This document shows, in pieces, positions 1,568 to 52,771 of a stretch of 64,000 nt of DNA (within the stretch, counting starts at the first letter, position 1; each line of letters begins with the position of its first letter). The stretch spans positions 69,995,717 through 70,059,716 of the forward strand of contig NC_092380.1 of assembly GCF_030028105.1 (NCBI RefSeq), written 5' to 3'. The translations under genes were made by a program, and so were the position numbers. The stretch comes from Mobula birostris. Its lineage: Eukaryota. Under the pieces are notes generated by a model. That model did not search any database. It had not been told where the DNA came from and saw nothing but the letters and a program-made list of their open reading frames with translations.

Positions 1568-1723
<156 letters not shown>

Positions 1724-2489: not shown

Positions 2490-2552
2490 GAAAACATCTT
2501 ACAAAAAGTTGTAATGACAGCCTTTGCAGATCGAACGGTGGTAACCATTGCT
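2490..2552 (+). CDS. ABCC8: Sulfonylurea receptor, penultimate coding exon
   Basis: cttttctag|GAAAAC...ATTGCT|gtaagt, 63 nt, phase 0-0. Encodes ENILQKVVMTAFADRTVVTIA, identical to the SUR1/SUR2 segment. Confidence 0.95.
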
Positions 2553-3329: not shown

Positions 3330-4760
3330 ACTATCTGCCCTTCCACCTATCTTTATTTCATCCCTAATCTTGGCCACAAAGAGATTAATTCCATCATCCA
3401 GATCAGTTACAACACTATTCCCATTGGAACATCACTAGTCAGCAGCAGCCAACCAGAAAAGGCCCCCTTTATTCCCATTCTTTCTGTCCTATCAGTCAGC
3501 CAGTCTTCTGTCCATGTTGGTATCTTTCCTGTAATATGGGCTCCTGTCTTGTTTAACAGCCTCTTGTGGGGCGTCTTGTCAAAGGCTTTCTGGAAATCCA
3601 AGAAAACAACATCCATTGACTCTGCCTTGTCTATCCTGCCTGTTCTTTCTTTCCACAAAGAATTCCAACAGATCTGACAGGCAAGATTTTCCCTTGAAGA
3701 AATCATGCTGGCTTTAGCCTATTTTAACATTTGCCTCCAAGTATCCTGAAACATCATCCTTAATTATGAACTCTTAACATCTTGTCAACAACTAGTCAGG
3801 CTAATAGAACAATGATTTCCTGTGGTTTGCCTACCTCTCCTCTTAAAGAGAGTGAGGTGACATTTGCAACTTTCAAGTCCTCCTGAACCACTGGAGACTT
3901 TAGTAATTACTACTAATGCCTCCACAGTATTTTCAGCTACCTCCTTCAGAACCCTGGGTTGCAGTCCATCTGGTCTCAGTAACACATCTACTTTCAGACC
4001 TTTCAGCTTCACAAGCATATTCTCCTTAGTGATAGTGATTCACTCACTTCTTCCCCCCCCCCCCCCCGACACCTCAAACTCCTGACGTCCTTCTGGTGTT
4101 TTCGACAGTGAGAACTGATACAATATACTCATTGACTTTATCTACTATTGTTTATTCCCCATTACTACTTCTCCAGTGTCACTTTCCAGCAGTTCAATAT
4201 CCACCCTTTCCTCTCTTTTACTCTTCATATATCTGTAAAAACATTTGGTTTCCTCTTTTCTATTATTGTCTAGCTTATCTTCAGCTTTTCTTTCCTTATT
4301 GCTTTTTATAGTTGTCTTCTGTATTTATAAGCTCCCCAATCAGCCAGCTTCCCTCTATTTTTTTGCTATATTATATGCCCAGCCTTTTATTTTTATCCTA
4401 TCCTTAAGTTCCCCTTGTGAGAGACGGTTGCCTCATCTTCCTTTTAGAATGTGTTTCCTGGCTACTGTTCAGAGGCCTGTATATAACTCTGATCAGGGTC
4501 TTTTTCATAACTCCACTCACAAGGATTCTACATCTTCTAATCCTGTGACTTGTTTCAAATTTTAACAACAGAGCCATTCCCCTCCGCTCACCTGCCTATC
4601 CTTTTGGTATGATGTGTGTCCATGAATGTTAAGCTCCCAGCTGTGCTCTTCTTTCAACCTTGGCCCAGTGATACTCAGTCACTGCTGCCAATTTCTGGCT
4701 GCGCTACAAGATAATCTACTTATTTCGTAAACTGCGTGCATTTAAATCTAGCAACTTCAG
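3330..4760 (-). mobile_element. Degenerate CR1 LINE ORF2 fragments
   Basis: Minus-strand ORF with VVFLDFQKAFDKTPHKRLL...W...SGW...VP; frameshifted upstream portion. Confidence 0.75.
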
Positions 4761-4834
4761 TCCTGTATTTTTGGCCCTTTTCAATTTTTATCTCCATGTT
4801 ACCATAAGATAAATTTGTATCCCATTCTAAAACA

Positions 4835-7610
4835 CACACATAAAGCTGGAGGAACTCAGCAGGCCAGGCATCTATGATGTCGACATTTCAGGCCGAGACC
4901 CTTCATCAGGATCTGGGAAAAAAACGAGGAATAGAAGGTGGGGGGGGGGGGGGCCTGGGTGCAGGGAGGAAGAACCATAAGGTGATAAGTGAAATGGCGG
5001 GGCGGGGGGGGTTGGTGTGAAGTAAAGAGCTGGGAAGTTGATTGGTGAAGGAGATAGGCAGGTAAGGAAATAAAGTGAGAGAGGGGAATGGGGAATAATG
5101 AAGGGGGGTGTTCGAGAAATTGATGTTTATACCATCAGGTTGGAGGCTACCCAGACAGAATATAAGGTGTTGCTCGCTCCTGCAATCTGACTGTGCAATC
5201 ATCACGACAGTAGAGAAGGCCATGAATTGACACGTCAGAATGGGAATGGGTAGTGGAATTAAAATGGGTGGCCATTGGGTGATCCCACTTTTTCTGGTGG
5301 ACAGAGCATAGGTGCTCAGTGAAGCGGTCTCTCAGTCTGTGTCGGGTCTCGCCGATATACAGGCCCCACAGGGAGCACCAGATACAGTAGATAACCCAGA
5401 TTCACAGGTGAAGTGTTGCCTCACCGGGAAGGACTGTTTGGAGCCCAGAATAGTAGTGAGGGAAGAGGTGTAGGGGCAGGTGTAGCACTTGTTCTGCTTG
5501 CAAGGATAAGTGCCAGGAGGGAGATCAGTGGGGAGGGACGAATGGACAAGGGAGTCATGTAGGGAACGATCCCGGGGCGGGGAGGGGAGGGAAAGATGTG
5601 AAGATATGCTTGGTGGGATTCCTCTGGAGATGGCGGAAGTATGAGCTGGATGTGGAGGTTGGTGGGGTGGCGGGAGGATGGGGTGAGGGCAGACGTGTGA
5701 GAAATGGAAGATACACAGTTGAGAGCAGCATTGATGAATGAAAAGCCTCATCTTGAGAGCAGATGCAGAGAAGATAGAGGAATTGAGAGAAGGGGATGGT
5801 GTTTTTACAAGTATCAGGGTGGGAAGAGGTATAGTCCAGGTAGTTGTGAGAGTCAGTGGGTTTATAATAGACATCAGTAGATAAGCTCTCTACGGAGATA
5901 GATAGAGAGTTTGAGAAAGGAGAGGGAAGTGTCGGAAATAGACAAGGTAAATTTGAGGGCAGGGTGGAAGTTGAAGGCAAAGTTGATGGAAGTCAACGAG
6001 CTCAGCATGGGTGCAGTAAGCAGCACCAATGCATTGTCGATGCAGCGTAGGGAAAGTTGGTGAGTGATACCATTGTAGGCTTGGAACACAGACTGGTCCA
6101 CATAGCTGACAAAGAATCAGCCATAACCAGGATCCATACGACTGCCCATGGCTACACCTTTTCTCTGAAGGAAGTGGCAGGAGCTAAAGGAGAAATTATG
6201 AAGAGTAAGGACAAGTTCTGCCAGACGGAGGAGAGTGGTGGTGGAGGGGAAGTGGTTGGGCCTGGTGTCCAGAAAGAAACAAGAGAGCTTTCCTGGTGGG
6301 GGATGGCGATGTACAGAGACCGGACATTCATAGTGAAAATAAGATGATCGGGGCCAGGGAACTTGAAATCATTGAAAAGGTCAAGGGTGTGTGAAGTGCC
6401 ATGGATGTAGGTGAGAAGGGACTGAACGGGGGGGGGGGGGGATAAAACTGAGTCGAGGTATGCAGATACAAGTTCAGTGAGCTAATAAGGTCAGTGATGG
6501 TGTGGGACACTATAATGGCCTGGTGCTCCTTAGTGGGGTCCTGTTTTAAGTGGGATGCTGTCTAAGTTGCATGCCATCTTGGTCAATGTCTCCCATCCAC
6601 TACATAATGTACTGGGTGGGCACAGGAGTACATTCAGCCACAGACTCGTTCCTTCGAGATGCAGCACAGAGCGTCATAGGAAGTCATTCCTGCCTGTGGC
6701 CTTCAAACTTTACAACTCCTCCCTTGGAGGGTCAGTCACCCTGAGCCAATAGCCTGGTCCTGGACTTGTTTCATAATTTACTGGCATAATTTACATATTA
6801 CTATTTAACTATTTATTACTATTTTTCTATTACTATTCTATTACTATTTATTATTTCTATGACTATTACTATTCACTAATAGTAGTATTACTATTTCTAT
6901 TACTATTTATTATTTATGGTGCAACTAACGAAAACCAATTTCCCCCGGGATCAATAAAGTATGACTATGTTCGAGGAGTAAGTAACAGGAAGTGTCTGAC
7001 AGTTGTCACCAGGCCTCAGCAAGCTAGAGCTCTGTCTGCCAGACTCCTACAGCACCCCCCTTATCTGCAGGTTTGATGGTGAGGGTTAGGATTAGGATTA
7101 CTGCAGAGGGTGTGGAGAGCAGCTTGTTCAGAAGGAGTGAGGTTGGAATTGGAGAGAAGAGTGGTGAAGTCGAAACGATTGATATCCATTATCAATGAAA
7201 AGATCCAGAGCAGGCAGAAGACCAGAGCAGGGTGTCCAGGAAGAGGAGGAGGCTTGAAGACAGAAGAAGGGGTCGTTGGTGCGGGGTAGAAAGTCCTTAC
7301 CAAAGAAGTAGGCCTGGAGATGGAGGCAGCAGAAGAAGCATCATGGTGCTTGCAGAACTCACTGAGGTGTGTGCGCAGGGGGACAAAGGTGAGGCCCTTA
7401 TTGAGGACAGAGAGGGGAAGGTCGGAGGGGTTGGTGAAGACCCGGCACAGATGACAGCTGGGATCAGAGGGGGGAAAGGGATTGGTAATGTCAGAGGAGA
7501 CGGGAAATTAGGGTGAGAGGAAGATGGGGTCTCCAGGGACCCAAGAGCTGGATTGCAAAGTGGTGACTGGGGAAGGAAGACAGGCCTACTTCTTTGGCAA
7601 GGATTCCACC
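4835..7610 (-). mobile_element. Penelope-like element (RT plus GIY-YIG), interrupted by a Rex1-like fragment
   Basis: Fragments IKPADK, RCIDN, VYYKPTDSHNYLDY, CYTCPY...HFTCES, QPDGINI. Degenerate hammerhead core at about 4877-4910. Confidence 0.8.
6490..6975 (+). mobile_element. Rex1/Babar-like LINE 3' end
   Basis: HPLHNVL...RLVPSRCSTERHRKSFLPVAFKLYNSS, an AT-rich tract, then a gggatcaataaagtatgactatg tail. A short second copy of the tail lies at about 8130-8190. Confidence 0.7.
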
Positions 7611-7611
7611 A

Positions 7612-7985
7612 AGCTGAGGCATGAAGAGTTAACATATGAGAAGCTCCTGGCCTGTACTTGCTGGAGTTTATAAGAATGAGAGAGATCTCATTAAAACCTA
7701 CTGAATATTGAAAGAACTAGATAGAATGGAATTAGAGAGAATGTTTCCAATAGTGGGAGAGTCTGGGAATCAGAGGGTGATGAATCTATATAATTCATTG
7801 CCACAGAAAGCTATAGAGATTAAGACTGTGCAAATTTAAAACAAAGACTTAATTAATGAGGGCAACAAAAGTTACACAGAGAATTCATAAGAATGGGGTT
7901 AAGAGGGAAAATAAATCAGCCATGACCAAATGGCAGAGCAGACTCAATGGGCCTAATTTTGCTCCTTTGTCTTATGGTCAAAGTA
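7612..7985 (+). mobile_element. CR1 LINE 3' fragment
   Basis: LYLLEF.RMR.DLIKTY-type coding remnant and the typical 3' UTR (gcagactcaatgggcc...tcttatggtc). Confidence 0.7.
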
Positions 7986-8378: not shown

Positions 8379-8513
8379 CATCGCGTTTCTCTAATTCTGG
8401 ATGCGGATCAGATTATAGTGCTGTCTGAGGGCACAGTAGCAGAGAACGATTCTGTTTCCAATTTGCTGAGCAAGGACAGCACATTTGCCTTTTTAGTGAA
8501 GACCAATATTTAA
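8379..8513 (+). CDS. ABCC8: Alternative terminal coding exon 'A' (SUR2A-like C-terminus)
   Basis: Polypyrimidine tract and ctttgtag|CATCGC, phase 0. Encodes HRVSLILDADQIIVLSEGTVAENDSVSNLLSKDSTFAFLVKTNI*, which aligns with SUR2A [45 protein letters not shown]. Candidate donor ACG|gtgtgt after 8554. Confidence 0.85.
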   Translation, partial: HRVSLILDADQIIVLSEGTVAENDSVSNLLSKDSTFAFLVKTNI

Positions 8514-8711
8514 AGATGGTCACAAAGATGACTTACTGGGTTTGTATGGGAACGGTGTGTCATCATTATAAAAGCAGAAATCTTTTGCTTTCAAAACTAA
8601 CATGGGCTGTTTTTGTTTTCCAGTGCTGAGTGGCTAACTGAGTTTCCTATCTTTTTAAAATAATATCTGGTCTATCAATCAATCAGACTAATTAATACTT
8701 TGGTTTTCCAG

Positions 8712-8849
8712 CATCGTGTGCATACCATTTTGAATGCAGACCTGGTGATTGTGATGAAGAGAGGAATTATTTTGGAATATGATGCTCCCAGCAGACTCTT
8801 GGAACAAAGGGATGGAACCTTTGCCTCTTTTGTACAGGCAGATAAATGA
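8712..8849 (+). CDS. ABCC8: Terminal coding exon 'B' (SUR1/SUR2B-type C-terminus)
   Basis: ttttccag|CATCGT, phase 0. Encodes [45 protein letters not shown], ending in ADK like SUR1 (SUR2B ends ADM). Confidence 0.95.
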
Positions 8850-8890
8850 TACACAGCAATAACTGCATTTGTAATTTCATTTGTTCTGTA

Positions 8891-8896
8891 AATAAA
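8891..8896 (+). terminator. Candidate polyadenylation signal of the SUR gene
   Basis: AATAAA about 40 nt after the exon B stop. Further AATAAA hexamers lie downstream, so usage is unproven. Confidence 0.4.
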
Positions 8897-11800
8897 ATTG
8901 GCATATTTCTTACGGATGCGTTGTACTGGCCAAAATTTTGCTCAGTAGCAACATAAAACATTAAACCATCATTCAGTGAATGGATTTTATAGCTAGACCA
9001 CATACATTGTTCAAATTTACTACAAAAAGAGACAACAAATCAGACTATTCACATTAACACAAAGCCTCTTCTAACAAAAAAGTTTGAAGAGTTCCAAGAC
9101 TTTCCAAAGTCTAAATAATTCTACCATATACCTACAATTCATTTATACAATAAATTTACATATATAGTAATTGGAAGACTTCCCCCTCTCCCCAATCTAC
9201 TACCTATATATTCCTTCTCAATATAAATCTGACACAATCATTCATTCCAAAGAAAGAAAACAGCATTTTTGTGGTTTGATACGACTCCAAGATGGTGTCT
9301 ACCTACCTGGTTGCGGAGTCAAAGGTGTCTAATATTCTGCAAACAACTTGAAGGGGAAGGTGAACAGCTACGGTCTTAGTACATTTAAGTACCAGTGATA
9401 ATGGTAGAAAAAGAGGTGAGGTCCTGCATGCATGTTTAGGAAATTAGAATTGAGGTTAAAACGCAAGACTTCAATGTTCTTATCTGCAATTACTATCTGT
9501 GCAACATCTTGATGAGTGCAGAAATAGGAAGTTGAAATGTGGTTGGGCAGATGTGTGGAAAGTGAAGCTTTAGATTCCAAAGGAACTGAGATCTTTTCTA
9601 CAAAAGATGGGGACTGCTACAAACTAGGCCAGTTGCAGCTCCTCAGGAACGCTAATTTCCCTGTAAAACAGGTACTGCTGTTTAAACTAGTTTGGTTGGG
9701 GCTGTGAACCCCAAAACAGAATCAGCAGAGAGAAAATTTCATCTGGAGATGGAAGGCAGGACTCAAGGAAGAAGTATTTAAGAAGGCCACAGTGCAGAAC
9801 AATAATAAATCTGTCGATAACTGGAGGGTATCAGGAAGGGTAAGAATCTACAAGCATAACAATACACCAGAGTAGGAAAATTATTTAGCTGAAGGCAAAA
9901 GAAAACAAAATAATCAGACAGCTTTTACCAGATTACAACAGAGTAAGGACTTTAGTGACAATAAAAATAAATCAAAGCTAATTTGTTTTACTGGGCAAGT
10001 ATATGAATGCAGAATATAGTAAATATATTATAAAACTACAAGCATAGTTATCATGGAAATGTAATTTGTTTGGTTGTAGCTAAAAAAAAGTGATGTGAAT
10101 ATTACATGCTTCATGCACAGTATGAGTTGGAAAACTGTAAAGGAGCAAAAATGCAAGAAAATTGCAGAGAAATGCAAAAATTATATAGGGTAGTCAGAAT
10201 GGGAGGATTTTAACTACAGTTTAAAACACCAGCCAAGCCTCAACTGGAATATTGTGTTTCTTTCCGATTATCACATTGTTGTGTCCTGAAAAGATTTAAG
10301 AGCATCGTTCCGGGGATGAGAGACTACATCCAAAACAATCGATCAGAAAATGGGGCTATTTGGAGTAGAACAAGGGGAGATTGGAAACAAATATGGAAAA
10401 TGATGATGAGCAGTTAGGACAGAGTGGATAGTTACCATCGCTAACCAGTTGCTGTAGAGGGGAACAAATTAGCTGCCTTCCTTCTCAGTCCTGAAGAAGG
10501 GTCAACTGTCTGTTTATTTCCATGGATGCTGCCTGACCTGCTGAATTCTTCCAGCATTTTGTGTGTATCACTTTGGATTTCCAGCATCTGCAGAATTTCT
10601 TGTGCTACTTGCCTGTTTTAAGGGCATTGTGCAATGCACACAGTGGAAATTCAGGACCAACAATAACCAATACTCTCATCCACACCTCAAATTCCTCTGC
10701 AACATCAGTACTGCAATGGTAATAAGCTCTCACTTCTAGCCACAGTGCGCTTTTTAAGTTTAACTAGAAATTTAAACACGGTAACAGGATGTAAAGCACT
10801 TGTTCACACGCCTCATTAATCAGTTTCAGTTAGCTGCTTTGATGGGCTTCCTATCAATACATTCAAAACTCATAGATGAATCTGATATTTAGAATGGCGT
10901 CGCACGGAAATGAGGCCAGCAAACTTTCTGGCAGCAAAATGGTTTCCTGGAACAATCAAACAGTCCCTATTCCCTGTAGCAAGGGTGTGGAGTAAAGAAA
11001 TGCTGGAGGAGAATCAATTGTTTATAGCTCATCTGTGGCCGTTTCCAGTGAATTGCTTCCAGTTATCAATACCACAGAAGATCATCATTTGCAAATTAAA
11101 GACCCAAAGATACTTTTATAGATAAGGGAGAAAATTATATGTGTTCAACTCAATCATGGGTAAAATAGTTATCCAGAATTCTCCAGCAGATGGTCAAGTA
11201 CAGTAATATCTTAAATATTCACATTCAGATCTGGCGTAGTTCAGAATCATTCATAGTATCAACAGCCAATTATTTTGGTCTTTTTTTTTGCAGCATGCTA
11301 GCAAATTCTAACAGTCCACAGTACTAGCTATATTTGATGCATCTGGCTGCTCCGTACAACTAGATGTGAACTTTCCCTTACTATTATTTTGATGTCAGAC
11401 TTCTACAATCTTGACAGTGAATATTCATAACATATTGAAAGAAGCAGCGAGATTCAACCCAGGAAAAAGAATAGAATTTTTGATGAGGAAGTGGCCTTCC
11501 AGCTCATTATGGTTCTGGCAAGTTATCATATCACAGTTCTGCAGACAACTGCATCACATATACTACTGAGAAAGTCAACAGCAAAATTTATAGGCTTAAT
11601 TTAGTCTGTACCACTGACAAATGCAACCACACTACATACCCAACTAATTTACCTACTTCATACTTGTAAGTCATTTCATCTTTGCACTCCTGTAACCATC
11701 AATCATAACTATCAGCCAGGGCTGTACTTGGAGCTGAGGTGACATAGGCAACAGGTGTGCGGCATTTAATTTGCCATTGAACTATTGGAGCCAAGAAGTC

Positions 11801-16139: not shown

Positions 16140-17640
16140 TAACATGCGCGAAGGCGATCACTGGTGCCAGTGAGAGAGGGAGGACCTGCTGCCAATACCG
16201 AGAGCACGGCTGGGGAAGCCGCGGGTCAGGGAACTGCCGGACACTGGAGTCCGTCAGCCTCCCCTATCTAGTTACGGTCATGATTGGCGGCGGCAGCTGA
16301 AGCTGCTGCTGGTGGACGACATCGTGCCCTCCCCTCCCTTCACATCCCCTCCCCTCGCGTCCTTCCTTAGCTGATGAGCAGAGCCGGGCAGAGTGGGACT
16401 GCTCTTCTCCGCCTCTCTCGCCGTGACTTCGGCTGAGTTCAGACGGGCAGTCGGCAATGGGCCGGGGATGTTGGCCAGAAAGGACCTCGTCCCCGAGGAG
16501 TATGTACTGCGGCTGGTGGAGGACGTGTCGCGGCCGCGCTACCGGGAGAAGCAGCGCAAGGTACGCTTCGTCAATAAGAACGGCGCCTGCAATGTCGCGC
16601 ACACCAACATCCGAGAGCAGGGCCGCTTCCTGCAGGATGTCTTCACCACACTGGTGGACCTCAAGTGGCGACATACACTGCTCATCTTCACTATGAGCTT
16701 CCTGTGCAGCTGGCTGCTCTTCGCCATGATCTGGTGGCTGATCGCCTTCGCGCACGGCGACCTCAACGGCGCCGCGCCGCCCGCCGTGCCTTGTATCACC
16801 AGCCTGCACTCCTTCACTTCAGCCTTCCTCTTCTCCATCGAGGTGCAGGTCACCATCGGCTTCGGCGGCCGCATGATCACCGAGGAGTGCCCGGCTGCCA
16901 TCACCGTTCTGATCGCGCAGAACATCGTGGGGCTGGTCATTAACGCTATCATGCTGGGCTGCATTTTCATGAAGACGTCGCAGGCGCACCGGCGCGCCGA
17001 GACGCTCATCTTCAGCAAGTTCGCCGTCATCTCGCCGCGGAACGGCCGCCTCTGCCTCATGTTCCGCGTGGGCGACCTGCGCAAGAGCATGATTATCGGA
17101 GCCAGCATCCGCATCCAGGTGGTGCGGCGCACGACCACGACCGAGGGTGAGGTGCAACCACTGCGTCAGATCGACGTGCTGCTCGACAACCCGGTGGGCG
17201 GCGGTGCCATCTTCCTCGTCTCGCCGCTCATCATCGCGCACGTTATTGACCGCGACAGCCCCCTCTACCACCTGACGGCCGCCGACCTGCAGCGCCAGGA
17301 CTTCGAAGTGGTCGTCATACTGGAGGGGGTGGTCGAGACGACTGGCATCACCACCCAAGCCCGCACCTCCTACCTGGCCGACGAGATCCTGTGGGGGCAC
17401 CGCTTCGTGCCGGTGGTGAGCGAGGACGATGGCCGCTACTCGGTCGACTACTCGAAATTCGGCAACACTGTGAAGGTGCCCACGCCGCCCCTCGGCGCCC
17501 AGCAGCTGGAGCAGGAGCAGGCCGTCGGGGGCGAAGGACTGGTCGCCGCCTTCGACATTTCGCCCGGAGTGAGGAGGAGGTCCTCAACCTCCCAACCCAA
17601 TGATTCGTGACCCCAGCACCACCTCTCCCCCAGGCCGACG
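16140..17640. promoter_or_regulatory. CpG island covering the KCNJ11 5' region and the whole CDS
   Basis: Abrupt change to GC-rich, CpG-dense sequence within an AT-rich, CpG-poor background. Boundaries are approximate. Confidence 0.8.
16468..17610 (+). CDS. KCNJ11: ATP-sensitive inward rectifier K+ channel Kir6.2, 380 aa, intronless CDS
   Basis: MLARK...PEEYVL start, TIGFG filter, short extracellular loop ([13 protein letters not shown]), [29 protein letters not shown] and an RXR motif (RRR, 17572-17580). The intronless CDS and these residues match Kir6.2 rather than Kir6.1. Confidence 0.95.
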
Positions 17641-18254
17641 GGTGGCAGGGACGAGATCCCAACACCAACCAGGCAACTCTTCCAAGCTTTCCCAAATCGT
17701 GTTTCCCCAGGGGGTTTTGTTTGGCCATTTTGCATCTACTGTATTTAAACGTGTTACAATTTTGTAAATAGAATTTTGCTAAAGAAAACTGATAAGAGAC
17801 ATTAAACTAGACTATTGGTAGCGCTGGCGTGGTTAGGTTTAAGTACTAAAGTTAACAGTTCTCTATACTGATTGTAGTAGCTGTTGATCAATCTAGTGGC
17901 CAGCCATTCTATTTTCTTCTTATTGTAACTTTAATGGAGGATGGCAGACCAACAAAAGGTGCATTGCTACCATCTACTGAGTTAGAGCGTGGAGCAAAGA
18001 AACAAGAAGTTTACCCACTAAATACAGCCCCCTCCCCACCAAAACTCAAATAATATAGTAATCTAATGCTTTTCAGAAAGTCAAATTTTGAACAAGGAAT
18101 TATTCAACCTAATGTGTGAACTATGTAAACATGCAAGTATAACTACTGTCCTTTTATACTCATCTCCCAGTTGATTTTGCACCATACACTGAATTTTACA
18201 GAAATGCCCTCCTTTGTTTGCCTTATCTGAACTTTGTTGCCACAGTCAGGAGAA

Positions 18255-42794: not shown

Positions 42795-44023
42795 CTGCAA
42801 AACAGAAATAATTAAAGTTTTTCTAAGTTCATATGTATATTTCATATTCATGATAAACACACTCAGAATTCAAAACATTTTAACTAAAAAGCACAATGTG
42901 CCAGATTATTTTTCAAAATTGTACCAGAGAATCTATAACAGCCACTTGAACTGTGAGATCAGTAATGTGCTTAACAGCACAGTCAAAATATGACACTTTC
43001 AACTGTATTGCTTGTATGTATTATAATGGTACATGGTAATCTTGAATGTAATTCTAAGGACAGGATATCCTAAACTTTAGAAAAAAATGTGATGGTGTTC
43101 AAAAGTGCTTATTAACATAGCTTATACATAGTTCAACCAATAACTAAGCAATCTGAATCTGCTTGTAGTGAGCGGCATTAAATTATATCAGAATAAGTAA
43201 TGAAATAAAACACAAAGAAGGAAGAAATAAACATTCCTGGCATTGCTCCTGCATTTTCTACATTACAATAATTTGTAATGTAGAAAATGCAGGGACAATT
43301 TTGCACATTAATATCCAAGGAATTACAACTGAAAGTAGAGCATACTTAATAATAAAAAAATTAGTTCACTGGAAGGAAGTTAAAGCAGAAAATTCCTGAA
43401 ATCAAAACTTTCACCTGTTCTATCAGCTAGCTCTTGAGACAGAGATGTTAGAACAGAACTATCTCACAAACTACTGTATATTCACTACCAGTATCAAGTA
43501 TTCTTATTTCAGATGTAGAATACACTAGCTGTAGAATACAAAACTAAGGATTTTCCTCATCACAAATCTATAAAATGTGAAATCTGCTTGTGTTTTGTTT
43601 ATAAGGGCTGAATCAGTGGAACTTGAATCATATGGCATAATAAAACACACATACAGAATCATGGAAGATTCAGTTAGATTGACATCACAACTTAGCACTT
43701 TATTATTTCACCATTTGTCTCTCTTAAATATATTCTAAAGGACTGACTGAATGTTCTCCCTTTTTAAAAACATAATAAGAATCCCTTACAAAGAAAGCTT
43801 GAATCACAGGAACACAATTTATAATAACTGGGATTTACAGGGATGCCACAGAGATACAAGTAATAAATGATTAAAGTTGAAAGTATTAGTCAGTAAAAAA
43901 ATACCTCAGTGAAATGTCATTTATTGTCTCTGGCTGAAATATCTCGTAGTAATGTTAACAAAGGATAGATGACTATGCATTTTAACAAAAAGTGTACTAT
44001 CAAGAACTTAGAATCCGAGTTAC

Positions 44024-44380
44024 CTTTTACATCCAGCTTAATACATTTTTCTTCTGGATGTTTCAAACTCACGTGATCCACTTCACAGAAATACTCATCA
44101 CCATCATCTTCTTGTACTGTTGCTTTAAAGGTCAACATGCTGTAGACACTGTAAGTGTTGCCAGGAAAACTAAACTCTTTCACATTATGATAATATCGGC
44201 CAACAGAGGAAGTTACTTCATCTTCGGTGTCCATCAGGAGTGATTTCTCCCCTTTTATGTTTCTATACCATTTGATTACTAAAGGACGGGGCTTGAAAAA
44301 ATTTATTGGACATGTCAGCATCACTAAACTGTTATGCTGCACAACATGAGGTATAATTATGTCGGACAATTTAGGAGCAA
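44024..44380 (-). CDS. NCR3LG1: B7-H6-like exon 6: post-TM IgC1-type domain 2
   Basis: tctctttag|TTGCTCC...AAAG|gtaact, 357 nt, phase 1-1. IAPKLSDI...LTCPINFFKP...WY...TYSVYSML...YFCEVDH. Confidence 0.87.
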
Positions 44381-44589
44381 CTAAAGAGAAAAAGAAAGTA
44401 AAATCAGTTTAACTTGTATATAACCTCTTTCAGAAAATGTTATAGTATATTTATATCAAATTCATAAAATGAAAAGTCATTTACAATACAGAAATTAAAC
44501 TGCACATATACTTCAGGCTTGAAATACTTTCTTTGCAACATGTCTAGTCCCCATCCAATTTTCCCATTCTAATTTATTCTCTATCTTAT

Positions 44590-44860
44590 AAACACAAGAT
44601 GCTGAAAATCCAGAGAAACACACACAGAACACTGGAGGAACTCAGCAGGTCAGGTAGCATCTATGGAGAGGAATAAAGAGTCGACGTTTTGGACCGAGAC
44701 CCTTCATCAGGACAGGAAAGAAAGGAGAAAGAAACCAGAATCAGAACCTGACTTCTTCCCCTTCCTTTACAGTCCCGATGAGGAGTCCCAGTGTGATTGT
44801 TTATTCCTCGTTATAGATGCTGCCTGACTTGCTGAGCTCCTCTGACATCCTGTATGTTTC
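44590..44860. mobile_element. Degenerate fold-back Penelope pLTR element
   Basis: gcatctatggagaggaataaa...gacccttcatcaggac, then an inverted tttattcctc...atagatgctgcctgacttgctgag arm. The hammerhead has G12 to A. Confidence 0.65.
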
Positions 44861-45339
44861 ATGCAGTATCTCTTAATTTCTCTTTCACATGCCGCAATTT
44901 TCAGACTCAGTGGTGCAACTCTGCATTTCAGGGCAAATTAGCAAAATGATCATCTCATCAAGGACAGTCAAGCAAAAGATTGGTCGTTCAGCCCACAAAC
45001 CAGTCCCGATGTTCAACTAATCCTTGAAGTTCACTTTATCTTAGTTTCCAATAATTTACCTTGGTTCCACAACCTGTTCCCAATTTTGTAACTAACTAAA
45101 TTTCAAAAGTTTTCCTTTGGCTGTAAAATGCTATGACATTTCCTAACACTGAGAAAATACAGAAATCCTGACAAAATTCTTTAAATTTTAGTTTAACTTT
45201 TCAAACTGATCTAGTCCTGACAGCAACTTTTGGAGTGCAGGTGCTCTACGGACTTCAATAGAGGTACTATTTCAGTCCCTATCTAAGGCATTGCTACAAT
45301 ACTTCCTTCATCCTTCTGAGCTTATAGTCCTAGGCACAT

Positions 45340-45500
45340 GAAATACTGCAGATGCTGGAGATCTAGAGCAACACACACAATGTGCTGGTGGAGTCAGCAT
45401 TTATGGATGGGAATAAACAGTCGACATCTCAGCCTGAAATGTTAACTGTTTATTCCCATCCATAGACACTGCCTGACCTGCTGAGGTCCTCCAGCACATT
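45340..45500. mobile_element. Collapsed fold-back Penelope pLTR element
   Basis: Perfect inner arms atggatgggaataaacagt (45403-45421) / actgtttattcccatccat (45445-45463); outer arms aatgtgctgg/ccagcacatt. Confidence 0.65.
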
Positions 45501-46000
45501 GAGCCTATAGTCCTGGTTCCAGATCCATTTTCGTATATTGTACATTTCAAAAAGTAGAGTAAATTTATTTCCTTACATAATATTTCTTGGTGGCACATAT
45601 ATTATCTATAACTGTGTAAGAATGCCTTTAAATAAATTATTTTACTATACTGGATGTGCGTACATAAAACTAATCCATCTGCTAGGCAGAAGATCTATTC
45701 TCACATAACTTAATAATACATCATAGCAACTTTCAACAGTAAAAATGTCAACTTTCAAACTCTTTTGAAAGCAGAGTATGCAATTAAAAATGAATAACAT
45801 GAACTCCATAAGAAAAGTAAAGAACATCAACACAGTAAATTGGAAAATCCAAGATTGTAAATTCCGGGCTCTACAAACAGGTACTTATTGATTTTAATCA
45901 TAAATGGTAATGGAGATCTAACATTTGCACAAATTAAATATGACATGCCCACAGTCTCCCAACACAGCAATGACTTTATATTGATTCAAAAAATGCTTAC

Positions 46001-46414
46001 TTCCATCAACACGTAAGCAGATGTGTTTTTCCTCTGTTCCAGTCGGATGCCACACTCTACATATGACTTCTACTCTGTCATCCATTGTTAGATCAGGATA
46101 AACTTCAACAGTGCTAGAAAGGCTGTATGTTCCATCACCATTGTCCTGGAAATTTGGTGTGCGGAGTTTCCAATTAACCAGAGTTTTATTTCCTAGCTCT
46201 ATTTCTTGTATCCTGTTTTTTCCCCAAAAACTTCCTATCATCTGATATCTTTTGAATTCGCCAATTAATTTCTCTCTAGCATCACTTTGTGTCTTCAAAT
46301 ACCACCAAACATGAATCTTATTAGGTCGGAATCCAGACACATGGCAAGTGATCTCTGCAAGTTCTTGGTGTATAATTCGAGCTGGCAACTGAATATCTGA
46401 TAACTTGGGCGGAA
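46001..46414 (-). CDS. NCR3LG1: B7-H6-like exon 5: post-TM IgC1-type domain 1, with a long insertion
   Basis: tctctcag|TTCCGCCC...GGAA|gtaagc, 414 nt, phase 1-1. VPPKLSDI...ITCHVSGFRP...WY...NGDGTYSLSS...VICRVWH. Confidence 0.85.
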
Positions 46415-46569
46415 CTGAGAGAGAAAAAAAAAGAAATATAAACCTGGATTAATCAAAATTATCTTTGACTTCTCTTGAAAATTAATATCAGTTAGGATGA
46501 ACAAGCTTTAGTGAAGACTCAAGTTTGATTGTCAAATACTATTATTTGATTTCAATCATATTTCATGTT

Positions 46570-47730
46570 TGCCATCCAGAAGTCAATATTACATGAGGTT
46601 GTTAAACAAAATAGGAGCCCATGGTATTACAGAAAAGATGCCAGCATGGATAGAATTTTGACTGGTTGGCAGGAGACAAAGAGGAGGAATAAAGGGGAGC
46701 CTTTTCTGGTTGGCTGCCAGTGGGAGACTAGTGGTGTTCCACAGGGGTCAGTATTGGGACTGCTTCTATTCATGTTATATGTCAATGACCTGGATGATAG
46801 GATTGATGGCTTAGTAACCAGGTTTGTGAATGATATGAAGGTACATTGAGAGGTAGTGTTGAGAAAGCAGGGAGTTTACAGAAAGACTTAGACAGATTAG
46901 GAGAATGGGCAAAGATGTGGCAGATAGAACACAGTGCCGAGAAGTCTGTTTTGGCAGAAGGATAAAGGCATAGACTATTTTCTAACTGGTAAGCAATTTC
47001 AGAAATCAGAGATATAAAGGGACTTGGGAGTCCACATGCAGCACTCCTTAAAGGTTAACTTGCAAGTTGCGTCAACAGTAAAGAAGGCAAATGCAATGTT
47101 AACGTTCATCTTGAGAGGGCTAGAATATAAAAGGAGGATATAATGCTGAGCCTTTATACAGCAATGGTCTGACTGCATTTGGAGTATTGTGAGAAATTTT
47201 AGGCCCCTTATCTAAGGAGTTACTGGTATTGGAAAGGGTTCAGAGGAGGTTTATAAGAATGATCCTGGGAATGAAAAGGATAACATATGAGGAGCAGATG
47301 CTGGCTCTGGGCCTATACCCACTTAGTTTAGAAGAATGAGGGCTATCTCATTGAAACCTCTTGAATATTTAAAGGCCTAGACAGAGTGCACATGGAGAGG
47401 ATGTTTCCTGTAGTGGGGGAGTCGAAGGCCAGAGAACACAGCCTCAGAATACAAGGCATCTCTTTAGAACAGAGATAAGAAAGAACTTCTTTAGCCAGAA
47501 GGTGGTGAATATGTGGAATTCTTCATCAGTGATGGCCATGGAGGCCAAGTTATTGGCTATATTTAAAATAGAATTTGACAGGTTCTCAACTAGTCAGGGC
47601 ATCAAAGGTCACGGGGAGAAGGCAGGGGAATGGGGTTGAGAAAGATAATATATCAGCCATGATGGAATAATGAAGCAGACTCAATGGGATGAATGGCTTA
47701 ATTCTGTTCCTCTATCTAATGGTCTTAGTT
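46570..47730 (+). mobile_element. Degenerate CR1 LINE 3' portion
   Basis: SGVPQGSVLGLLLFMLYVNDLDD...FVND and a CR1 3' UTR. Confidence 0.8.
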
Positions 47731-48029
47731 AAATTAGATCAATGCTAGGTGAACTGCAGCCTTATTATGGCTCATTCTGCTAGGATGAGCTTAAAGACAA
47801 TGCTTAATGATTACAAGCTGCTGTTACATTCCCATGACACCAAATACATAAATGACAATTCCTAAGGTGGCATCAGCATTTCTGACAGATAATGACCAAA
47901 TCAAGGCTACGTAAAAGGAACATAAATGTATAAACTTAGTGCAAATTTAAGTTATGTAGAAAAACAAACACCCTGTAAAAGTGGGACCAAATATAGGGCA
48001 ATAGCAATGTTCAATAGGGTTCATCAGCC

Positions 48030-48390
48030 TTGGACGGCAGCCCACTAGGAGAAGGAAAACTCTGATCTTAAACCTCCACTGGCTTGCGGCCATACCCACC
48101 CATGGGAAAGGTTTCGGGAGTAAACCCCGAGGAAGAAATCCAGAGCCCTAAGGCAGTTTGATGTTGTCTACAACTTCACTCTGGCGGCCTCTGCGATGAC
48201 ACTGGTGCCAGGCTGTATCAGCACTTGCCCTTCCCTTGAACTACATCAGTGACGTGGAGAGGGGGAATCCACTACATAGGCAACAGCCGGTTCTTCAAAT
48301 CTTCCTGCCCAGGCCTGCTCCCTGGAGAGGACACAGTCCACCAGAGGTGCAAACCCATGATCCCCTGGGATCAACGGCTGCCTGCTAGCA
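48030..48390 (+). mobile_element. Non-autonomous RTE-like element
   Basis: ggagaaggaaaactctgat...aaacc and ggtttcgggagtaaacccc resemble RTE-clade 5' UTR sequence as recalled; no ORF. Confidence 0.45.
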
Positions 48391-49308
48391 TTGTTCAAAG
48401 TTCTGCTGCAGTTCTAAGGTGTGGAAAAAGCATAAAATATGCCACACAGAAGTGAGGTAACAAAACACAAAATATGAGAAGAGTTCAAAATATGTTTGCT
48501 GTTTTAAAATATACATGTGAAATAAAAATAACGCATCTACTGTACATTCACATTCTGCGGTACAGTTTAGAGACAGCACATTGCACCAGTCTACACAAAG
48601 GTTTTTTTGATGCGTACTTTGTCCAGTTTACATTGGAAGCACTTTGAAACACACTGGTGGCTTTTCCAACTGATCAAAAGGACTGCTCAAAGATCTAAAA
48701 AAACTAAGACTTCCTTGTGCTACCAACAAAATATAAATTCGGCACTAAATAGTAAATTTAAAAACAATGAATCAACATCATTTTCCTCAATGCAGCAGTT
48801 AACAAATTAATTTAACAAATAGCAATTTCCTCAATTAACAATTTAATCCTTAGAATTTCCTTCCCATGTAAGTGTTACTCAATTCACATAAGTTCCAAAA
48901 GAACTAAGCAGTGGTTATTGGTAACCCCGCTGAATCAGTGAAATAAATTAATTGTACAACAATAAAATGCAAAAGCAACAGTGACATTATGCAGCTTTAT
49001 AAAGCAAACTATTAGAGTTCAAGAAAAGATTCTACACAAGAAGTTCATGAAAATTATTCGAACTATGAAATAAACTTACAGTAACATTTCACAATTAATT
49101 TCAATTCAAAGACTAAACATTCACATTTAGTAATACCAAATGAAATAAATGAAAATCTCAAAACTGTAGCAAGTTCTGTGCAGCACTGGTTAACCAGAAA
49201 ATTATAAAATCTAGCATAAAAGCATTGTTTTTATTGTGTCCCATCCCAATAATTTAAGTTTCCTCTGAGTCAGTAACTACAAATTCATTACTGATACACA
49301 GACATTAC

Positions 49309-49425
49309 CTTTGTACATGTACCACATGTAAAGAAAAATTCCTACTCCTATTAGTAATACAGAGATGATAACGCTTGCAGTGACGCTTCCAACTATTGCT
49401 CTTTTGGATATTCGAATTTCTGCTT
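49309..49425 (-). CDS. NCR3LG1: B7-H6-like exon 4: transmembrane segment
   Basis: ttctttttaacag|AAGCAG...TACAAAG|gtaatg, 117 nt, phase 1-1, open. Encodes EAEIRISKRAIVGSVTASVIISVLLIGVGIFLYMWYMYK, with an uncharged hydrophobic run of more than 22 residues at the canonical post-C1 position of B7 proteins. Not in the ORF track. Confidence 0.85.
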
Positions 49426-50542
49426 CTGTTAAAAAGAAGTGCAAAAGAATTTACAAGATAGTCACTTCAAAGTCTTTTCCTAGCAGCTGTAATCTTTTGT
49501 TGAGTATCTAGTCACTAAGGAACAATTTTGAAACATGGAATAATTTAAAGTCCATTAATAAAAGGAAATACCCACAGGAAATAAAGAGAAAGAAAGAAAT
49601 TTTGTTACTTTCTACCTATGATTCAACTGACAACCCAAGAGCATCTTTCCACCATTGCCAACTTCCACAATATTTATGAAAGTGAAAGTATTTTGAAATT
49701 GAGTAAAATTAACTCTGAAGTTACACAATTGTCAAAAAACTTAATGCCTGATTAAAAAGGATAGTGAAGTTATGGGATGGAAGAAGCAACTGTGAGAAAC
49801 TTCCCATAAAATGCACAACACTTTGGCAAAATAACTATCAACAATACACATGTACTTAAATTTACTTGCACCTGCGCAAGAGTTCATGGATACATGTAAG
49901 CATAAAGATCCACCAAAATAATCTGTGTTAATATTCAGTTTAATCAATGCTATAAAAGCCTTTGAAAATTTTACGTGAAAAGAAATTTTCTTTAAAAAAA
50001 AAATCAGACTTGTTTTCCAAGTAAATTTTACAACTACAACTACAACCCCAGCTCCAACCTCATTCTGGTCTCACACATAAAACAGACATTCCATTTCAAG
50101 ATGCCGTGAGACAAATTTACCGGGTGGACAATAGAAAATATTCAAGGTTACTGTCAAAGTCTCCTTGAAAAAAAAATGCAATGGCATTTTCTGGAATCTC
50201 TGCCCACAATTCCCCAAAGTGGAGAAAGAGCATTCTAGGTGGAAATGAGAACCTTGAACCAGAAGATCATATGAAAATCCAATACAAATGATGGCAAAGC
50301 GTATCTTCTCTCCCCCACAGTGGAAAGTACCTATCCATCCCAATAAGGCAACAAATCCCAAGTTGGCTTATCAGTCACCTAATGAGCTACAGAATCAGAG
50401 CCAAGCCAAGACGTCTTGGATCCCAAGAGATGGCCTAAAGCAGACAGCAGCAATCCACCAAGGTTGCTCTCAATGGGAACTTAACTAAAAGTTCCAAACT
50501 TCAAATTTTAATTAAAAAAAAAGCAAGTGTACTACAGCTAAC

Positions 50543-50869
50543 CTTTCAAAGTCACTGCAGCATTCACGGTGTATGGTTCTGCAAAAGTCTTATGTGTCAC
50601 ACGACATCCGAAACTGCTGCCAATGTCTTCTTTCTGAGGTTCAAACCGAACTTCAGCGGTTACTTTGCATGTTCCATCAGGATTTTTGACTGGTGGGGTA
50701 ATGCATAGATCTGTTAACAGTTTTGTTTTACTTTGTGATGGACTTGACTGAAACCATTCCACGTTGCTTTCACAAGGATAATATCCATTCAAATGACAAC
50801 CCAAGAACATCTCGCCACCATTGCCAACTTCCACGACCTCTTTGGAAACAACAGTCACCGTGGGTTGTG
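50543..50869 (-). CDS. NCR3LG1: B7-H6-like exon 3: extracellular IgC1 domain
   Basis: ttacag|CACAACCC...AAAG|gttagc, 327 nt, phase 1-1. GCHLNGYYP...WF...PPVKNPDGT...EDIGSSFGCRVTH resembles the B7-H6 C domain (GFYP, TIKNMDGT, YQCVVRH). Confidence 0.9.
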
Positions 50870-52206
50870 CTGTAACACAAAAATTGTACATTAATCTTAC
50901 AATGGTACTTCAAAGCTACTGTATACAATAAAAATGGCATTGAACTGTAAGGAAATAAGTTGGAAATCAGTGATTACATCAAACATATATGCCTGGATAC
51001 ACACAGACACCATCAACAAATAGTAGAATTGAGAGGCTAAAATCATTATGAAAGACTTAAGTCTGAAGCTGAGAAATGATTTGATAGGACAAGGACAAAA
51101 GAATGAATGGGTTATATAGAAGAACAATGCAGAAGACAGCTTAGAGTAAAACCAGCATCATAGCTATAGCTGGGTCAATAATAATTTGGACACTTAACGG
51201 TAGCCAATTAATCTCCCTACCAGCATACAACTGAGATGTGGGAGGAAACAAGAGCACCTGGAAGGACCTCTTAGTGTCACAGGGAATACGTGCAATTCCG
51301 CAGGATTGAACCCAAGTCACTGTAGCTGTGAGCTGCAGCTCCACTAGATACATGTACCTTTGACAATATAAAATTTCATGACTGCTAATATGCAGGTTTT
51401 TAATCTATTCCAATTGCACAGCAAAAAAAAGGATTTTTTTTAGCACCTAATTCCGTATCATGTAAAGAAGCAGCTAACATTGCACATTTACTCATAGGTT
51501 ACATTATCCTTACTCGAGTTGTGTAATTTCTGAATTCCGCACATCTCTTTGGAAATGCTCCCTTCCATGATTGACACTTTTAATGCAGAATTGACTGACA
51601 CAATAATGAACAGTGCATTATTTGACATATTGTTGCTAATGGAACACATTCTAATGAAACAGCATTAGTCCAAAACATTTGTTGTTTCTCTCTTCATAAA
51701 TGCTGTTTTACTGCTTCAACTTTGCTGTTTTGTGGCAGATTTCCAACATCTATATCATTGCTTTTCCATGACTGAAATCCATGACCACATTGATCATATT
51801 TTATTTTAAACTTGAGTTCATTTGAAATGATGAATGCAAAGATTTTGAACTACTGCAAGTTTGCATTTGAAGTAACTCGATCATTTGCACAAATGTGTTG
51901 TGTAAAGGATCATCAGCATGTGAGACAACATTTACGTTCAGACCATTATGAAAAATGAGATTAGAAAACACAAGCACAAATTATTCTGCAAAATCAAACT
52001 AAGGCATCGGCTGTCTTTCAGTTCATAGCTTCTACCTGATACTATTTCCAATAATTTTTGTCCTTAATTAGGATCGCCAATAAATGTAGAACTTTGCTTT
52101 CATACTCAGGCAAAACATTGTTTCCAAAAATATTTTCACTAAAATACAAACTTACATATAAGATGCCACTGTATAATTTACAGTTATGTGAAATAAATCA
52201 ACTTAC

Positions 52207-52560
52207 CTAAAACTTCAAGCTTCATCATCACGAATTCTTTATAATCTGGTGGAATAACAACCTCACACTTGTACTCTCCACTATGTTTCAATGTAACATT
52301 TCTCAGTAAAAGTGACATGCTTCCATTTTGAATGGCGTTTGCAGACAGCTCAGCTTCTTCCCATTGAGATGTTATGTGCCCATCAGAATACACAAGGATA
52401 TTTACTCTTTCAGTACCCTGACTGAAAACCCATAAGATGCCTAAATTCTTTGGGTTCAATGAGATCCCAGTCAGGTTGGCAATTTCACACTGCAGAAGGC
52501 TATTTTTGTGAAGGATTACTTCCACTGGACCTTTATTCGTTTTCAGCTTCAAATTTCCTT
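52207..52560 (-). CDS. NCR3LG1: B7-H6-like exon 2: IgV domain
   Basis: atag|AAGGAAAT...TTAG|gtaagt, 354 nt, phase 1-1. LNPKNLGILW and GEYKCEVVIPP resemble human B7-H6 LNITSMGITW and GEYRCEVVVTP. Three N-glycan sequons (NLT, NGS, NVT). Confidence 0.9.
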
Positions 52561-52771
52561 CTATAAATTTAAGACAAAATATATAACTGAGTGAATTGGA
52601 CAAAATTGTGCATACATTTATCTTAGCTATTATAGAAAACATTATAGACCATTTATCCAACTATTCCAATATTTTTGTTATGAAATACTTGTTTTCACAT
52701 CATGCCTCAGTCCCCAACTTAACTCTGAGTTCCTTCCCATTGTCACATGCCAGTGATAATAAACCGGATTC

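What the first reader, a model, noticed from the sequence alone, without database searches (positions are those of the whole stretch)
8379..8849. SUR2A/SUR2B-style alternative terminal exons in a gene that synteny identifies as ABCC8 (SUR1)
Seen: two tandem phase-0 exons, both starting with His-Arg-Val. The first matches the SUR2A tail pattern (HRVS.I.DA...V.SEG...E.D.V.NLL...K...F..LV.TN) and the second the SUR1/SUR2B tail. Established: the A/B choice in ABCC9 changes about the last 42 aa and alters MgADP and K-channel-opener responses, and mammalian ABCC8 has only the B-type exon. Inference: the exon duplication predates the ABCC8/ABCC9 split, this lineage keeps a 'SUR1A' isoform, and Kir6.2/SUR1A would be an undescribed KATP channel type. 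Caveat: some residues here are SUR2-like (KSS.LIM, VMKRG.ILEYD.P), so orthology rests on the KCNJ11 and NCR3LG1 neighbours.
Basis: partly seen in the sequence, partly recalled or inferred. Interest (0 to 1): 0.8.

Follow-up and report, generated by a model that had tools for sequence, protein, structure and literature searches.

The report
SUR2A-type tail exon in ray ABCC8
Rays, skates, sharks and chimaeras keep and actively splice a second, alternative last coding exon in ABCC8 (SUR1, the pancreatic-type sulfonylurea receptor). In other vertebrates this switch is known only from the heart/vessel paralogue ABCC9, so the switch is older than the two genes.

Summary
The window carries the 3' end of a sulfonylurea-receptor gene 7.6 kb upstream of an intronless KCNJ11. 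After exon 2490-2552 come two phase-0 exons that each encode HRV... plus a stop: A (8379-8513) and B (8712-8849).

RNA contigs from six runs of three related species show both 2552>8379 and 2552>8712 junctions. Exon A is a cassette of 161 or 176 nt, using donors at 8539 or 8554, and is spliced on to exon B. This is the ABCC9 38A/38B architecture. A-inclusion is the major form in two runs.

Exon A is conserved in skate, zebra shark and elephant shark, with dN/dS of 0.15-0.21. It is absent from the same intron in bowfin, sturgeon, zebrafish, a frog and a bird.

The elephant-shark orthologue groups with ABCC8 (100/100), not ABCC9. A-type tails of ABCC8 and ABCC9 form one clade (96/90). The exon duplication therefore predates the ABCC8/ABCC9 split, and bony vertebrates lost exon A from ABCC8.

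The functional consequence (SUR2A-like Mg-nucleotide handling on a SUR1 body) is inferred, not tested. I found no published description.

The parts
1575..1708 (+). ABCC8 exon (NBD2 signature to Walker B region: (D)[44 protein letters not shown]), third from last constitutive coding exon
   Evidence: Sequence with AG/GT borders. 93-98% identical to the same exon next to KCNJ11 in skate, elephant shark, bowfin and sturgeon. Carries FSLGQ, the ABCC8 state; ABCC9 has FSVGQ.
2490..2552 (+). ABCC8 exon [21 protein letters not shown]. Its donor at 2552|2553 is used for both exon A and exon B.
   Evidence: The last 25-26 nt of this exon are the 'loose ends' of RNA contigs that continue at 8379 or at 8712.
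8379..8554 (+). Exon A, a cassette exon: CDS 8379-8510 (44 aa, A-type/SUR2A-like tail), stop 8511-8513, then 26 or 41 nt of UTR. Two donors are used: 8539|8540 (161-nt exon) and 8554|8555 (176-nt exon).
   Evidence: RNA joints 8539>8712 (runs X4, X3) and 8554>8712 (runs X15, X21), and 2552>8379. Conserved in L002, L010 and L001. dN/dS 0.15-0.21.
8712..8914 (+). Exon B, the terminal exon: CDS 8712-8846 (45 aa, B-type tail as in SUR1/SUR2B), stop 8847-8849, AATAAA at 8891-8896. RNA contigs end at 8898-8914.
   Evidence: (61.5 bits to SUR2B, 57.6 to SUR1).
16468..17610 (+). KCNJ11 (Kir6.2), single coding exon, 380 aa
   Evidence: ORF; IRK + IRK_C; 120 best hits all named KCNJ11, best is 97% to Hypanus sabinus; Kir6.2 598-610 bits against Kir6.1 565.
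43917..52660 (-). Ig-superfamily gene (NCR3LG1/B7-H6-like): V-set exon about 52190-52540, C1-set exons within 45918-46388 and 43917-44369
   Evidence: V-set, C1-set; the best whole-domain PDB matches of the V exon are NCR3LG1, E about 5e-5, which is weak. A gene on the same strand with the same domains sits at this position in elephant shark, skate and tarsier.

Best explanation
This is the 3' end of ABCC8 (SUR1) of a stingray-like batoid. The gene keeps the ancestral pair of mutually exclusive C-terminal coding exons that is otherwise known only from ABCC9 (SUR2A/SUR2B). The donor of exon 2490-2552 is spliced to one of two acceptors. If it joins 8379, the 161/176-nt cassette exon A is included. 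Translation then ends at 8511-8513 after a 44-residue A-type tail, and exon B becomes 3' UTR. The stop lies only 26-41 nt before the last junction, so by the usual 50-55 nt rule the mRNA should escape nonsense-mediated decay. If the donor joins 8712 directly, the result is the 45-residue B-type tail that all bony-vertebrate SUR1 proteins have. The swapped segment runs from the NBD2 H-loop histidine to the C-terminus. Shown here: both mRNAs exist, exon A is under purifying selection across all three cartilaginous-fish lineages, the gene is ABCC8, and exon A is orthologous to the ABCC9 A exon. Inferred: the A-tail SUR1 pairs with the neighbouring Kir6.2 to give a KATP channel whose Mg-nucleotide activation and metabolic sensitivity are shifted towards the cardiac (SUR2A) type while the SUR1 body is kept. 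The tandem exon duplication arose before the ABCC8/ABCC9 duplication, and exon A was lost from ABCC8 on the bony-vertebrate stem.
For: Anatomy. RNA: run X15 has contigs exonY>8379...8554>8712 (depth 6.1) and exonY>8712 (16.9). For the same two forms, X4 gives 271 against 115, X3 gives 254 against 102 and X21 gives 9.45 against 9. Introns and the sequence beyond 8914 are uncovered, so this is RNA and not DNA. Exon A words are held by RNA runs of many related organisms. Conservation: skate L002 6634-6765, zebra shark L010 3372-3503, elephant shark L001 6037-6168, each upstream of exon B and of KCNJ11. dN/dS is 0.15-0.21 for A and 0.10-0.15 for B. The cassette donor is conserved, giving 176/178/176 nt. 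Absence elsewhere: tblastn and an A-tail HMM find nothing (at most 1 bit, against 77-91 bits for positive controls) in the last ABCC8 intron of bowfin, sturgeon, frog, zebrafish and a bird. Orthology: KCNJ11; P0360 with ABCC8, 100/100; 83% identical to turtle ABCC8; FSLGQ, TDSML, K.VVK, ILNAD...ADK against the ABCC9 states FSVGQ, TDD, KNMVK, ILTAD...ADM. Exon homology: the window's A tail is 61% and 59% identical to snake and tetrapod ABCC9 A tails against 42-44% to B tails. A8+A9 form a clade at 96/90, and A8+B8 is rejected at p-AU 0.034. Function of the segment: exchanging the last 42 residues between SUR1 and SUR2A switches Mg-nucleotide regulation (PMC6292810).
Against: The window itself holds only about 110 shared residues of the gene, so the full-length tree rests on the elephant-shark orthologue and not on this species. 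The tail tree has 45 columns and p-AU is only 0.034. No cartilaginous-fish ABCC9 was available, so an old transfer of exon A from ABCC9 cannot be excluded. By HMMER against the PDB, exon A scores no better with SUR2A (27 bits) than with generic ABCC tails (ABCC2 33 bits), and it is as close to invertebrate SUR-like tails (mean 53%) as to ABCC9 A tails (mean 49%). Part of the A8/A9 likeness is therefore shared ancestral character. Elephant-shark exon A begins PRV and not HRV (CCT for CAT), so its H-loop histidine is missing. Depths are assembler word depths and tissues are unknown. No protein or channel data exist.
Confidence: 0.88

Rival explanations
1. The gene is really ABCC9, or a third SUR paralogue, that came to lie beside KCNJ11, so this is the known SUR2A/SUR2B splicing in a rearranged locus.
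For: The B tail scores slightly higher with SUR2B (61.5 bits) than with mammalian SUR1 (57.6). RSRL and SGSIR in the elephant-shark exon match ABCC9 states.
Against: The elephant-shark protein, whose C-terminus is identical to the KCNJ11-linked exons, sits inside ABCC8 at 100/100. The ABCC9-derived states TDD, KNMVK, FSVGQ, ILTAD and ...ADM are all absent. The SUR2B-like residues are also present in bowfin, sturgeon, bird, turtle and skink ABCC8. The same ABCC8-KCNJ11-Ig gene order is seen in tarsier.
Confidence: 0.02
2. Exon A is a decaying relic or a 'poison' exon whose inclusion only down-regulates ABCC8, with no A-tail protein made.
For: It carries a premature stop relative to exon B. The elephant-shark copy has lost the H-loop histidine. 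No protein evidence exists.
Against: dN/dS is 0.15-0.21 with an intact frame, and the stop is at the same codon in four lineages separated by roughly 400 My (that age is my own estimate). The stop is 26-41 nt from the last junction, inside the NMD-insensitive range. A-inclusion is the major form at high depth in two runs. The orthologous ABCC9 exon makes a well-known protein.
Confidence: 0.04
3. Exon A of cartilaginous-fish ABCC8 is not ancestral. It arose by an independent duplication of exon B, or was copied in from ABCC9 by gene conversion on the cartilaginous-fish stem.
For: Only cartilaginous fishes have it among the ABCC8 loci examined. No cartilaginous-fish ABCC9 A exon was available for comparison. 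The tail alignment is short.
Against: An independent duplication is rejected (A8+B8 held together, p-AU 0.034), and A8 is sister to all ABCC9 A tails of teleosts and tetrapods, mirroring the gene tree. A8 is only 38-61% identical to A9, which fits an ancient split better than a later transfer. The cassette size (161-178 nt here, about 180 nt in L006) and the exon order are shared.
Confidence: 0.06

Closest known systems
ABCC9 exon 38A/38B switch (SUR2A / SUR2B)
   Same: Two tandem phase-0 exons, each running from the NBD2 H-loop HRV to the stop. The upstream one is a cassette of about 160-180 nt with its own stop, and skipping it gives the B tail. The A exons are orthologous (clade 96/90). PMC2883927 and PMC8504400 describe the ABCC9 case.
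   Different: It sits in the other paralogue, ABCC8, next to KCNJ11. The A tail is 44 residues, not 45, and only 38-61% identical to ABCC9 A tails. Two alternative donors are used in the UTR part.
ABCC8 (SUR1) of bony vertebrates
   Same: Orthologous gene. Same linkage to KCNJ11. The B tail is 76-84% identical.
   Different: Bony-vertebrate ABCC8 has a single terminal exon. No trace of exon A in bowfin, sturgeon, zebrafish, frog or bird. The listed mammalian SUR1 variants are exon skips, and none replaces the tail (PMC8504400).
Engineered SUR1/SUR2A tail-swap chimeras (Vedovato et al. 2018, PMC6292810)
   Same: A SUR1 body with an A-type last ~42 residues, which is what the A isoform encodes. 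In the chimeras this swap switched Mg-nucleotide regulation and partly switched metabolic sensitivity.
   Different: Those are laboratory constructs from mammalian sequences. This is a natural isoform with a divergent A tail, and it has not been tested.

Membership tests
ABCC8 (SUR1) orthologue | Lies head-to-tail immediately upstream of KCNJ11 | tested here: met
   Exon B ends at 8849 and the Kir6 CDS starts at 16468 on the same strand. The Kir6 is KCNJ11. Same arrangement in L001, L002, L003, L004, L005, L010, L011 and L012.
ABCC8 (SUR1) orthologue | Full-length protein groups with ABCC8, not ABCC9, in a rooted tree | tested here: met
   Done on the elephant-shark orthologue P0360 (C-terminus identical to the L001 exons): ABCC8 clade 100/100, ABCC9 clade 100/100, invertebrate outgroups. 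The window's own protein is available only for its last ~110 residues.
ABCC8 (SUR1) orthologue | Paralogue-diagnostic residues in the part encoded in the window | tested here: met
   FSLGQ, ILNAD, RGIIL and ...QADK match bowfin and sturgeon ABCC8. Every ABCC9 examined has FSVGQ, ILTAD (ILEAD in Oncorhynchus), RGN/S and ...ADM.
ABCC8 (SUR1) orthologue | Binds sulfonylureas and gates Kir6.2 | not testable with these tools
   Needs expression and electrophysiology.
SUR A/B alternative C-terminal exon switch | Two tandem phase-0 exons, each encoding HRV... to a stop | tested here: met
SUR A/B alternative C-terminal exon switch | Both forms are made: A included (then spliced to B) or A skipped | tested here: met
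   RNA contigs with 2552>8379, 8539/8554>8712 and 2552>8712 in runs X15, X21, X16, X4 and X3 from three organisms.
SUR A/B alternative C-terminal exon switch | The A exon is homologous to the ABCC9 A exon | tested here: met
   Clade A8+A9 96/90. The alternative A8+B8 is rejected at p-AU 0.034. Only 45 columns, so support is moderate.
SUR A/B alternative C-terminal exon switch | Tissue-specific choice of A or B | tested here: inconclusive
   The A:B depth ratio runs from about 0.4 (X15) through about 1 (X21) to about 2.4 (X4, X3), so usage varies between samples. Tissues are not given for the coded runs.
SUR A/B alternative C-terminal exon switch | The two tails give different MgADP and opener responses | not testable with these tools
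   Inferred only, from PMC6292810.

The most novel reading that the evidence does not exclude
The common ancestor of jawed vertebrates already had a SUR gene with an A/B tail switch before ABCC8 and ABCC9 separated. Cartilaginous fishes would still run that switch in both paralogues, giving up to four SUR isoforms. In some ray tissues the dominant SUR1 would be the A-tail form, giving a natural Kir6.2/SUR1-A channel with SUR1 drug and TMD properties but cardiac-type Mg-nucleotide regulation. No such KATP subtype has been described in any animal.
Probability: 0.5. Interest if true: 0.72.

Novelty: new variant of a known kind. Interest (0 to 1): 0.62.

Why it matters
The SUR2A/SUR2B tail switch is the textbook reason why cardiac and vascular KATP channels differ, and SUR1 has been regarded as a fixed 'B-tail' protein. 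If the same switch exists, is conserved and is heavily used in ABCC8 of cartilaginous fishes, three things follow.

1. The exon duplication dates to before the ABCC8/ABCC9 split, and the single-tailed SUR1 of bony vertebrates is a secondary loss.
2. There is a natural SUR1-body/A-tail protein with which to test what the last ~44 residues of NBD2 do, independently of the rest of SUR2. Until now this has been approached only with artificial chimeras (PMC6292810).
3. It raises the question of which shark and ray tissues need a metabolically 'closed' Kir6.2/SUR1 channel.

It also shows that current gene models in cartilaginous fishes (longest product ends in exon B) under-report this isoform.

Tried and rejected
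**Searches that led nowhere**
- phmmer of exon A against 1.84 billion representatives. The best full-length hits were echinoderm 'ABCC9-like' proteins and generic ABCC tails, not SUR isoforms, because isoforms are hidden inside 50% clusters.
- A whole-length search with the echinoderm protein P0143. It returned only invertebrate paralogues and a mis-named 2255-aa elephant-shark 'ABCC9' that is not a SUR.
- A profile made of a starfish carrier plus cartilaginous-fish exon peptides. MAFFT split the fragments, so the profile was abandoned. Instead I searched the last 183 residues of starfish P0215, which finally gave named vertebrate ABCC8 and ABCC9 proteins.
- The search of earlier findings found nothing beyond this same finding.

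**Loci that could not be read**
- No DNA was returned for Hypanus sabinus or tarsier because the files were too large. Coelacanth KCNJ11 was not on record. Mammal, coelacanth, lungfish, gar, bichir and lamprey loci were therefore not examined.
- Runs X1 and X2 gave no laid contigs, probably because of the filter for human-like contigs. X3 and X4 from the same studies did.

**Leads rejected**
- A rattlesnake 'ABCC8' with an A tail (P0134/P0304) looked like a reptile SUR1-A isoform. It falls inside ABCC9 and is a naming error.
- The cobra A+B fragment P0121 groups with ABCC9 tails.

**Literature**
- Eight literature calls (seven searches and one in-paper lookup) found no description of an alternative last exon in ABCC8.

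Full report
**What is in the window**

On the + strand the window holds the last exons of a sulfonylurea-receptor gene.
- Exon 1575-1708 encodes ...[44 protein letters not shown].
- Exon 2490-2552 encodes [21 protein letters not shown] and has the donor GCT|gtaagt.
- Exon A starts at 8379 and exon B at 8712.

Both A and B begin right after a good acceptor with CAT CG. GT. (His-Arg-Val), the NBD2 H-loop. Each runs to its own stop, at 8511-8513 for A and 8847-8849 for B.

An intronless Kir6 ORF follows on the same strand at 16468-17610. It has IRK and IRK_C domains. Ig V-set and C1-set exons lie on the minus strand at 43.9-52.7 kb.

**Identity of the neighbours**

The 120 best database hits of the Kir6 protein are all named KCNJ11, and the best is 97% identical (Hypanus sabinus, a stingray). 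Against solved structures it scores 598-610 bits with Kir6.2 and 565 with Kir6.1. It also lacks the 11-residue Kir6.1 loop insert.

The V-set exon's best whole-domain PDB matches are NCR3LG1/B7-H6, although weakly (E about 5e-5). A gene with C1-set domains lies on the minus strand at the same position in elephant shark, little skate and tarsier.

**Is exon A used?**

It is. Public runs hold the exons, and the introns are uncovered.
- In run X15 (a close relative), one contig carries the last 26 nt of exon 2490-2552, then 8379-8554, then 8712-8741. A second contig carries the same 26 nt joined directly to 8712.
- Runs X4 (over 99% identical to the window), X3 (a second species) and X21 each show both forms; run X16 shows the exon-B junction and an exon A contig with no upstream junction.
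- X4 and X3 use a donor at 8539|8540, which gives a 161-nt exon. X15 and X21 use 8554|8555, which gives 176 nt.
- Word depths of the A-included and A-skipped junction contigs are 271/115 (X4), 254/102 (X3), 9.45/9 (X21) and 6.1/16.9 (X15).
- Coverage stops 13-18 nt after an AATAAA at 8891-8896.

Exon A is therefore a cassette exon with an internal stop, spliced on to exon B. This is the arrangement that makes SUR2A and SUR2B from ABCC9. The stop lies 26-41 nt before the last junction, which is within the range that normally escapes nonsense-mediated decay (my knowledge of the 50-55 nt rule). RNA runs of about ten coded organisms hold part of exon A.

**Is exon A conserved?**

I fetched the DNA around KCNJ11 in other species. 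Exon A is present between the ENILQK... exon and exon B in three of them:
- little skate (L002 6634-6765, 86% identical in protein);
- zebra shark (L010 3372-3503, 86%);
- elephant shark (L001 6037-6168, 74%).

dN/dS is 0.15-0.21, close to the 0.10-0.15 of exon B. The acceptor, the position of the stop and a donor giving a 176-178-nt exon are kept.

In contrast, tblastn with four A-type queries and an HMM of A tails found nothing in the last ABCC8 intron of bowfin, sturgeon, a spadefoot toad, zebrafish (intron only 155 nt) and a passerine bird. These scored at most 1 bit, against 77-91 bits for the positive controls.

**Is the gene ABCC8?**

The window holds too little of the gene for a tree, so I used the elephant-shark orthologue. 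Protein P0360 is named ABCC8 in UniRef, and its C-terminus is identical to the KCNJ11-linked exons of L001.

With the alternative tail removed, in a tree of 1508 columns rooted on echinoderm, hemichordate and amphioxus relatives, P0360 groups with turtle and skink ABCC8 at 100/100. It is 83% identical to turtle ABCC8. Eleven ABCC9 proteins form a separate 100/100 clade.

The residues encoded in the window agree. FSLGQ, ILNAD and ...FVQADK match bowfin and sturgeon ABCC8, while all ABCC9 have FSVGQ, ILTAD and ...ADM. Elephant-shark TDSML and K.VVK are also ABCC8 states.

They are ancestral states that mammalian SUR1 has changed.

**Are the A exons of the two genes the same exon?**

The window's A tail is 61% identical to a snake ABCC9 A tail, 59% to that of a tetrapod ABCC9 locus (L006), and 42-44% to B tails.

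In a tree of 38 tails, the A tails of ABCC8 and ABCC9 form one clade (96/90) and all B tails form another (100/100). Forcing the A and B tails of ABCC8 together is rejected (p-AU 0.034). Both A types have also lost the proline of the D-x-P motif that B tails and invertebrate tails keep.

There are caveats. The alignment has only 45 columns. A tails are also close to invertebrate SUR-like tails (mean 53%). No cartilaginous-fish ABCC9 could be added.

**Mechanism and meaning**

Shown here: one gene makes two mRNAs that differ only in the last 44 or 45 residues of NBD2.

Inferred: the A-tail protein assembles with Kir6.2 and changes nucleotide regulation. The basis is the finding that swapping the last 42 residues between SUR1 and SUR2A switches MgADP regulation and partly switches metabolic sensitivity, and that deleting them abolishes MgADP activation (PMC6292810).

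The simplest history is a tandem duplication of the last exon before the ABCC8/ABCC9 split, retention in ABCC9 of jawed vertebrates and in ABCC8 of cartilaginous fishes, and loss from ABCC8 on the bony-vertebrate stem.

**Novelty**

Reviews state that only SUR2 uses alternative last exons (PMC2883927). The known SUR1 variants are internal exon skips (PMC8504400). Eight literature calls (seven searches and one in-paper lookup) found no report of an A-type exon in ABCC8.

The longest annotated products in stingray, skate, zebra shark and elephant shark end in exon B. Whether minor predicted isoforms with the A tail exist in databases could not be checked.

I rate this a new variant of a known kind. 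It is real and well supported at the RNA and evolutionary level, and its functional significance is still to be tested.

Noticed in passing
L001:6037-6039 (elephant shark exon A): The first codon of exon A is CCT (Pro) where the ray, skate and shark have CAT (the NBD2 H-loop His). The rest of the exon is intact. This is either an assembly error or a chimaera A isoform without the catalytic histidine.
   Followed up: partly
window 8539-8556: Two alternative 5' splice sites of exon A, 15 nt apart and both in the UTR part. 8539|8540 is used in organisms A and B, and 8554|8555 in organism I.
   Followed up: yes
window 8509-8510: The window's A tail ends ...KTNI. Close relatives (runs X15, X16, X21, X17) read AA for TT, giving ...KTNK, the ending also seen in ABCC9 A tails. 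Run X4 agrees with the window.
   Followed up: partly
database proteins P0134/P0304, P0377, P0188, P0318, P0322, P0340: Naming and model errors. Rattlesnake 'ABCC8' is ABCC9 with an A tail. Komodo 'ABCC9' is ABCC8. The elephant-shark 'ABCC9' of 2255 aa is not a SUR. Several ABCC9 models read exon A and exon B through as one protein.
   Followed up: yes
P0215 and other echinoderm, hemichordate and amphioxus 'ABCC9-like' proteins, C-terminus: Their single tail is a mosaic of A-like motifs (ILVLS.G.V.E.D, LVK) and B-like motifs (TILN.D, D.P, FASFV). After the exon duplication each vertebrate copy therefore kept a different subset. The tree could not resolve which copy is the original.
   Followed up: partly
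window 39580-41742 (-) and 56396-58170 (+): Long ORFs with reverse-transcriptase-like sequence (LINE elements). Further repeat-derived ORFs fill the 5.8-kb intron before exon A (about 3400-7640) and recur at about 22.4-26.0 kb.
   Followed up: no
window 16000-18000 and 60000-64000: GC rises to 0.58 over KCNJ11 and to 0.48-0.54 at the right end of the window, against about 0.36 elsewhere. The right end may be a CpG island or the first exon of the next gene.
   Followed up: no
L003, L004, L011 downstream of KCNJ11: The gene after KCNJ11 differs in ray-finned fishes (exostosin-like in bowfin, a 2OG-Fe(II) oxygenase in sturgeon, Mob1-like in zebrafish). The Ig (NCR3LG1-like) neighbour is shared by cartilaginous fishes and tarsier.
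   Followed up: no
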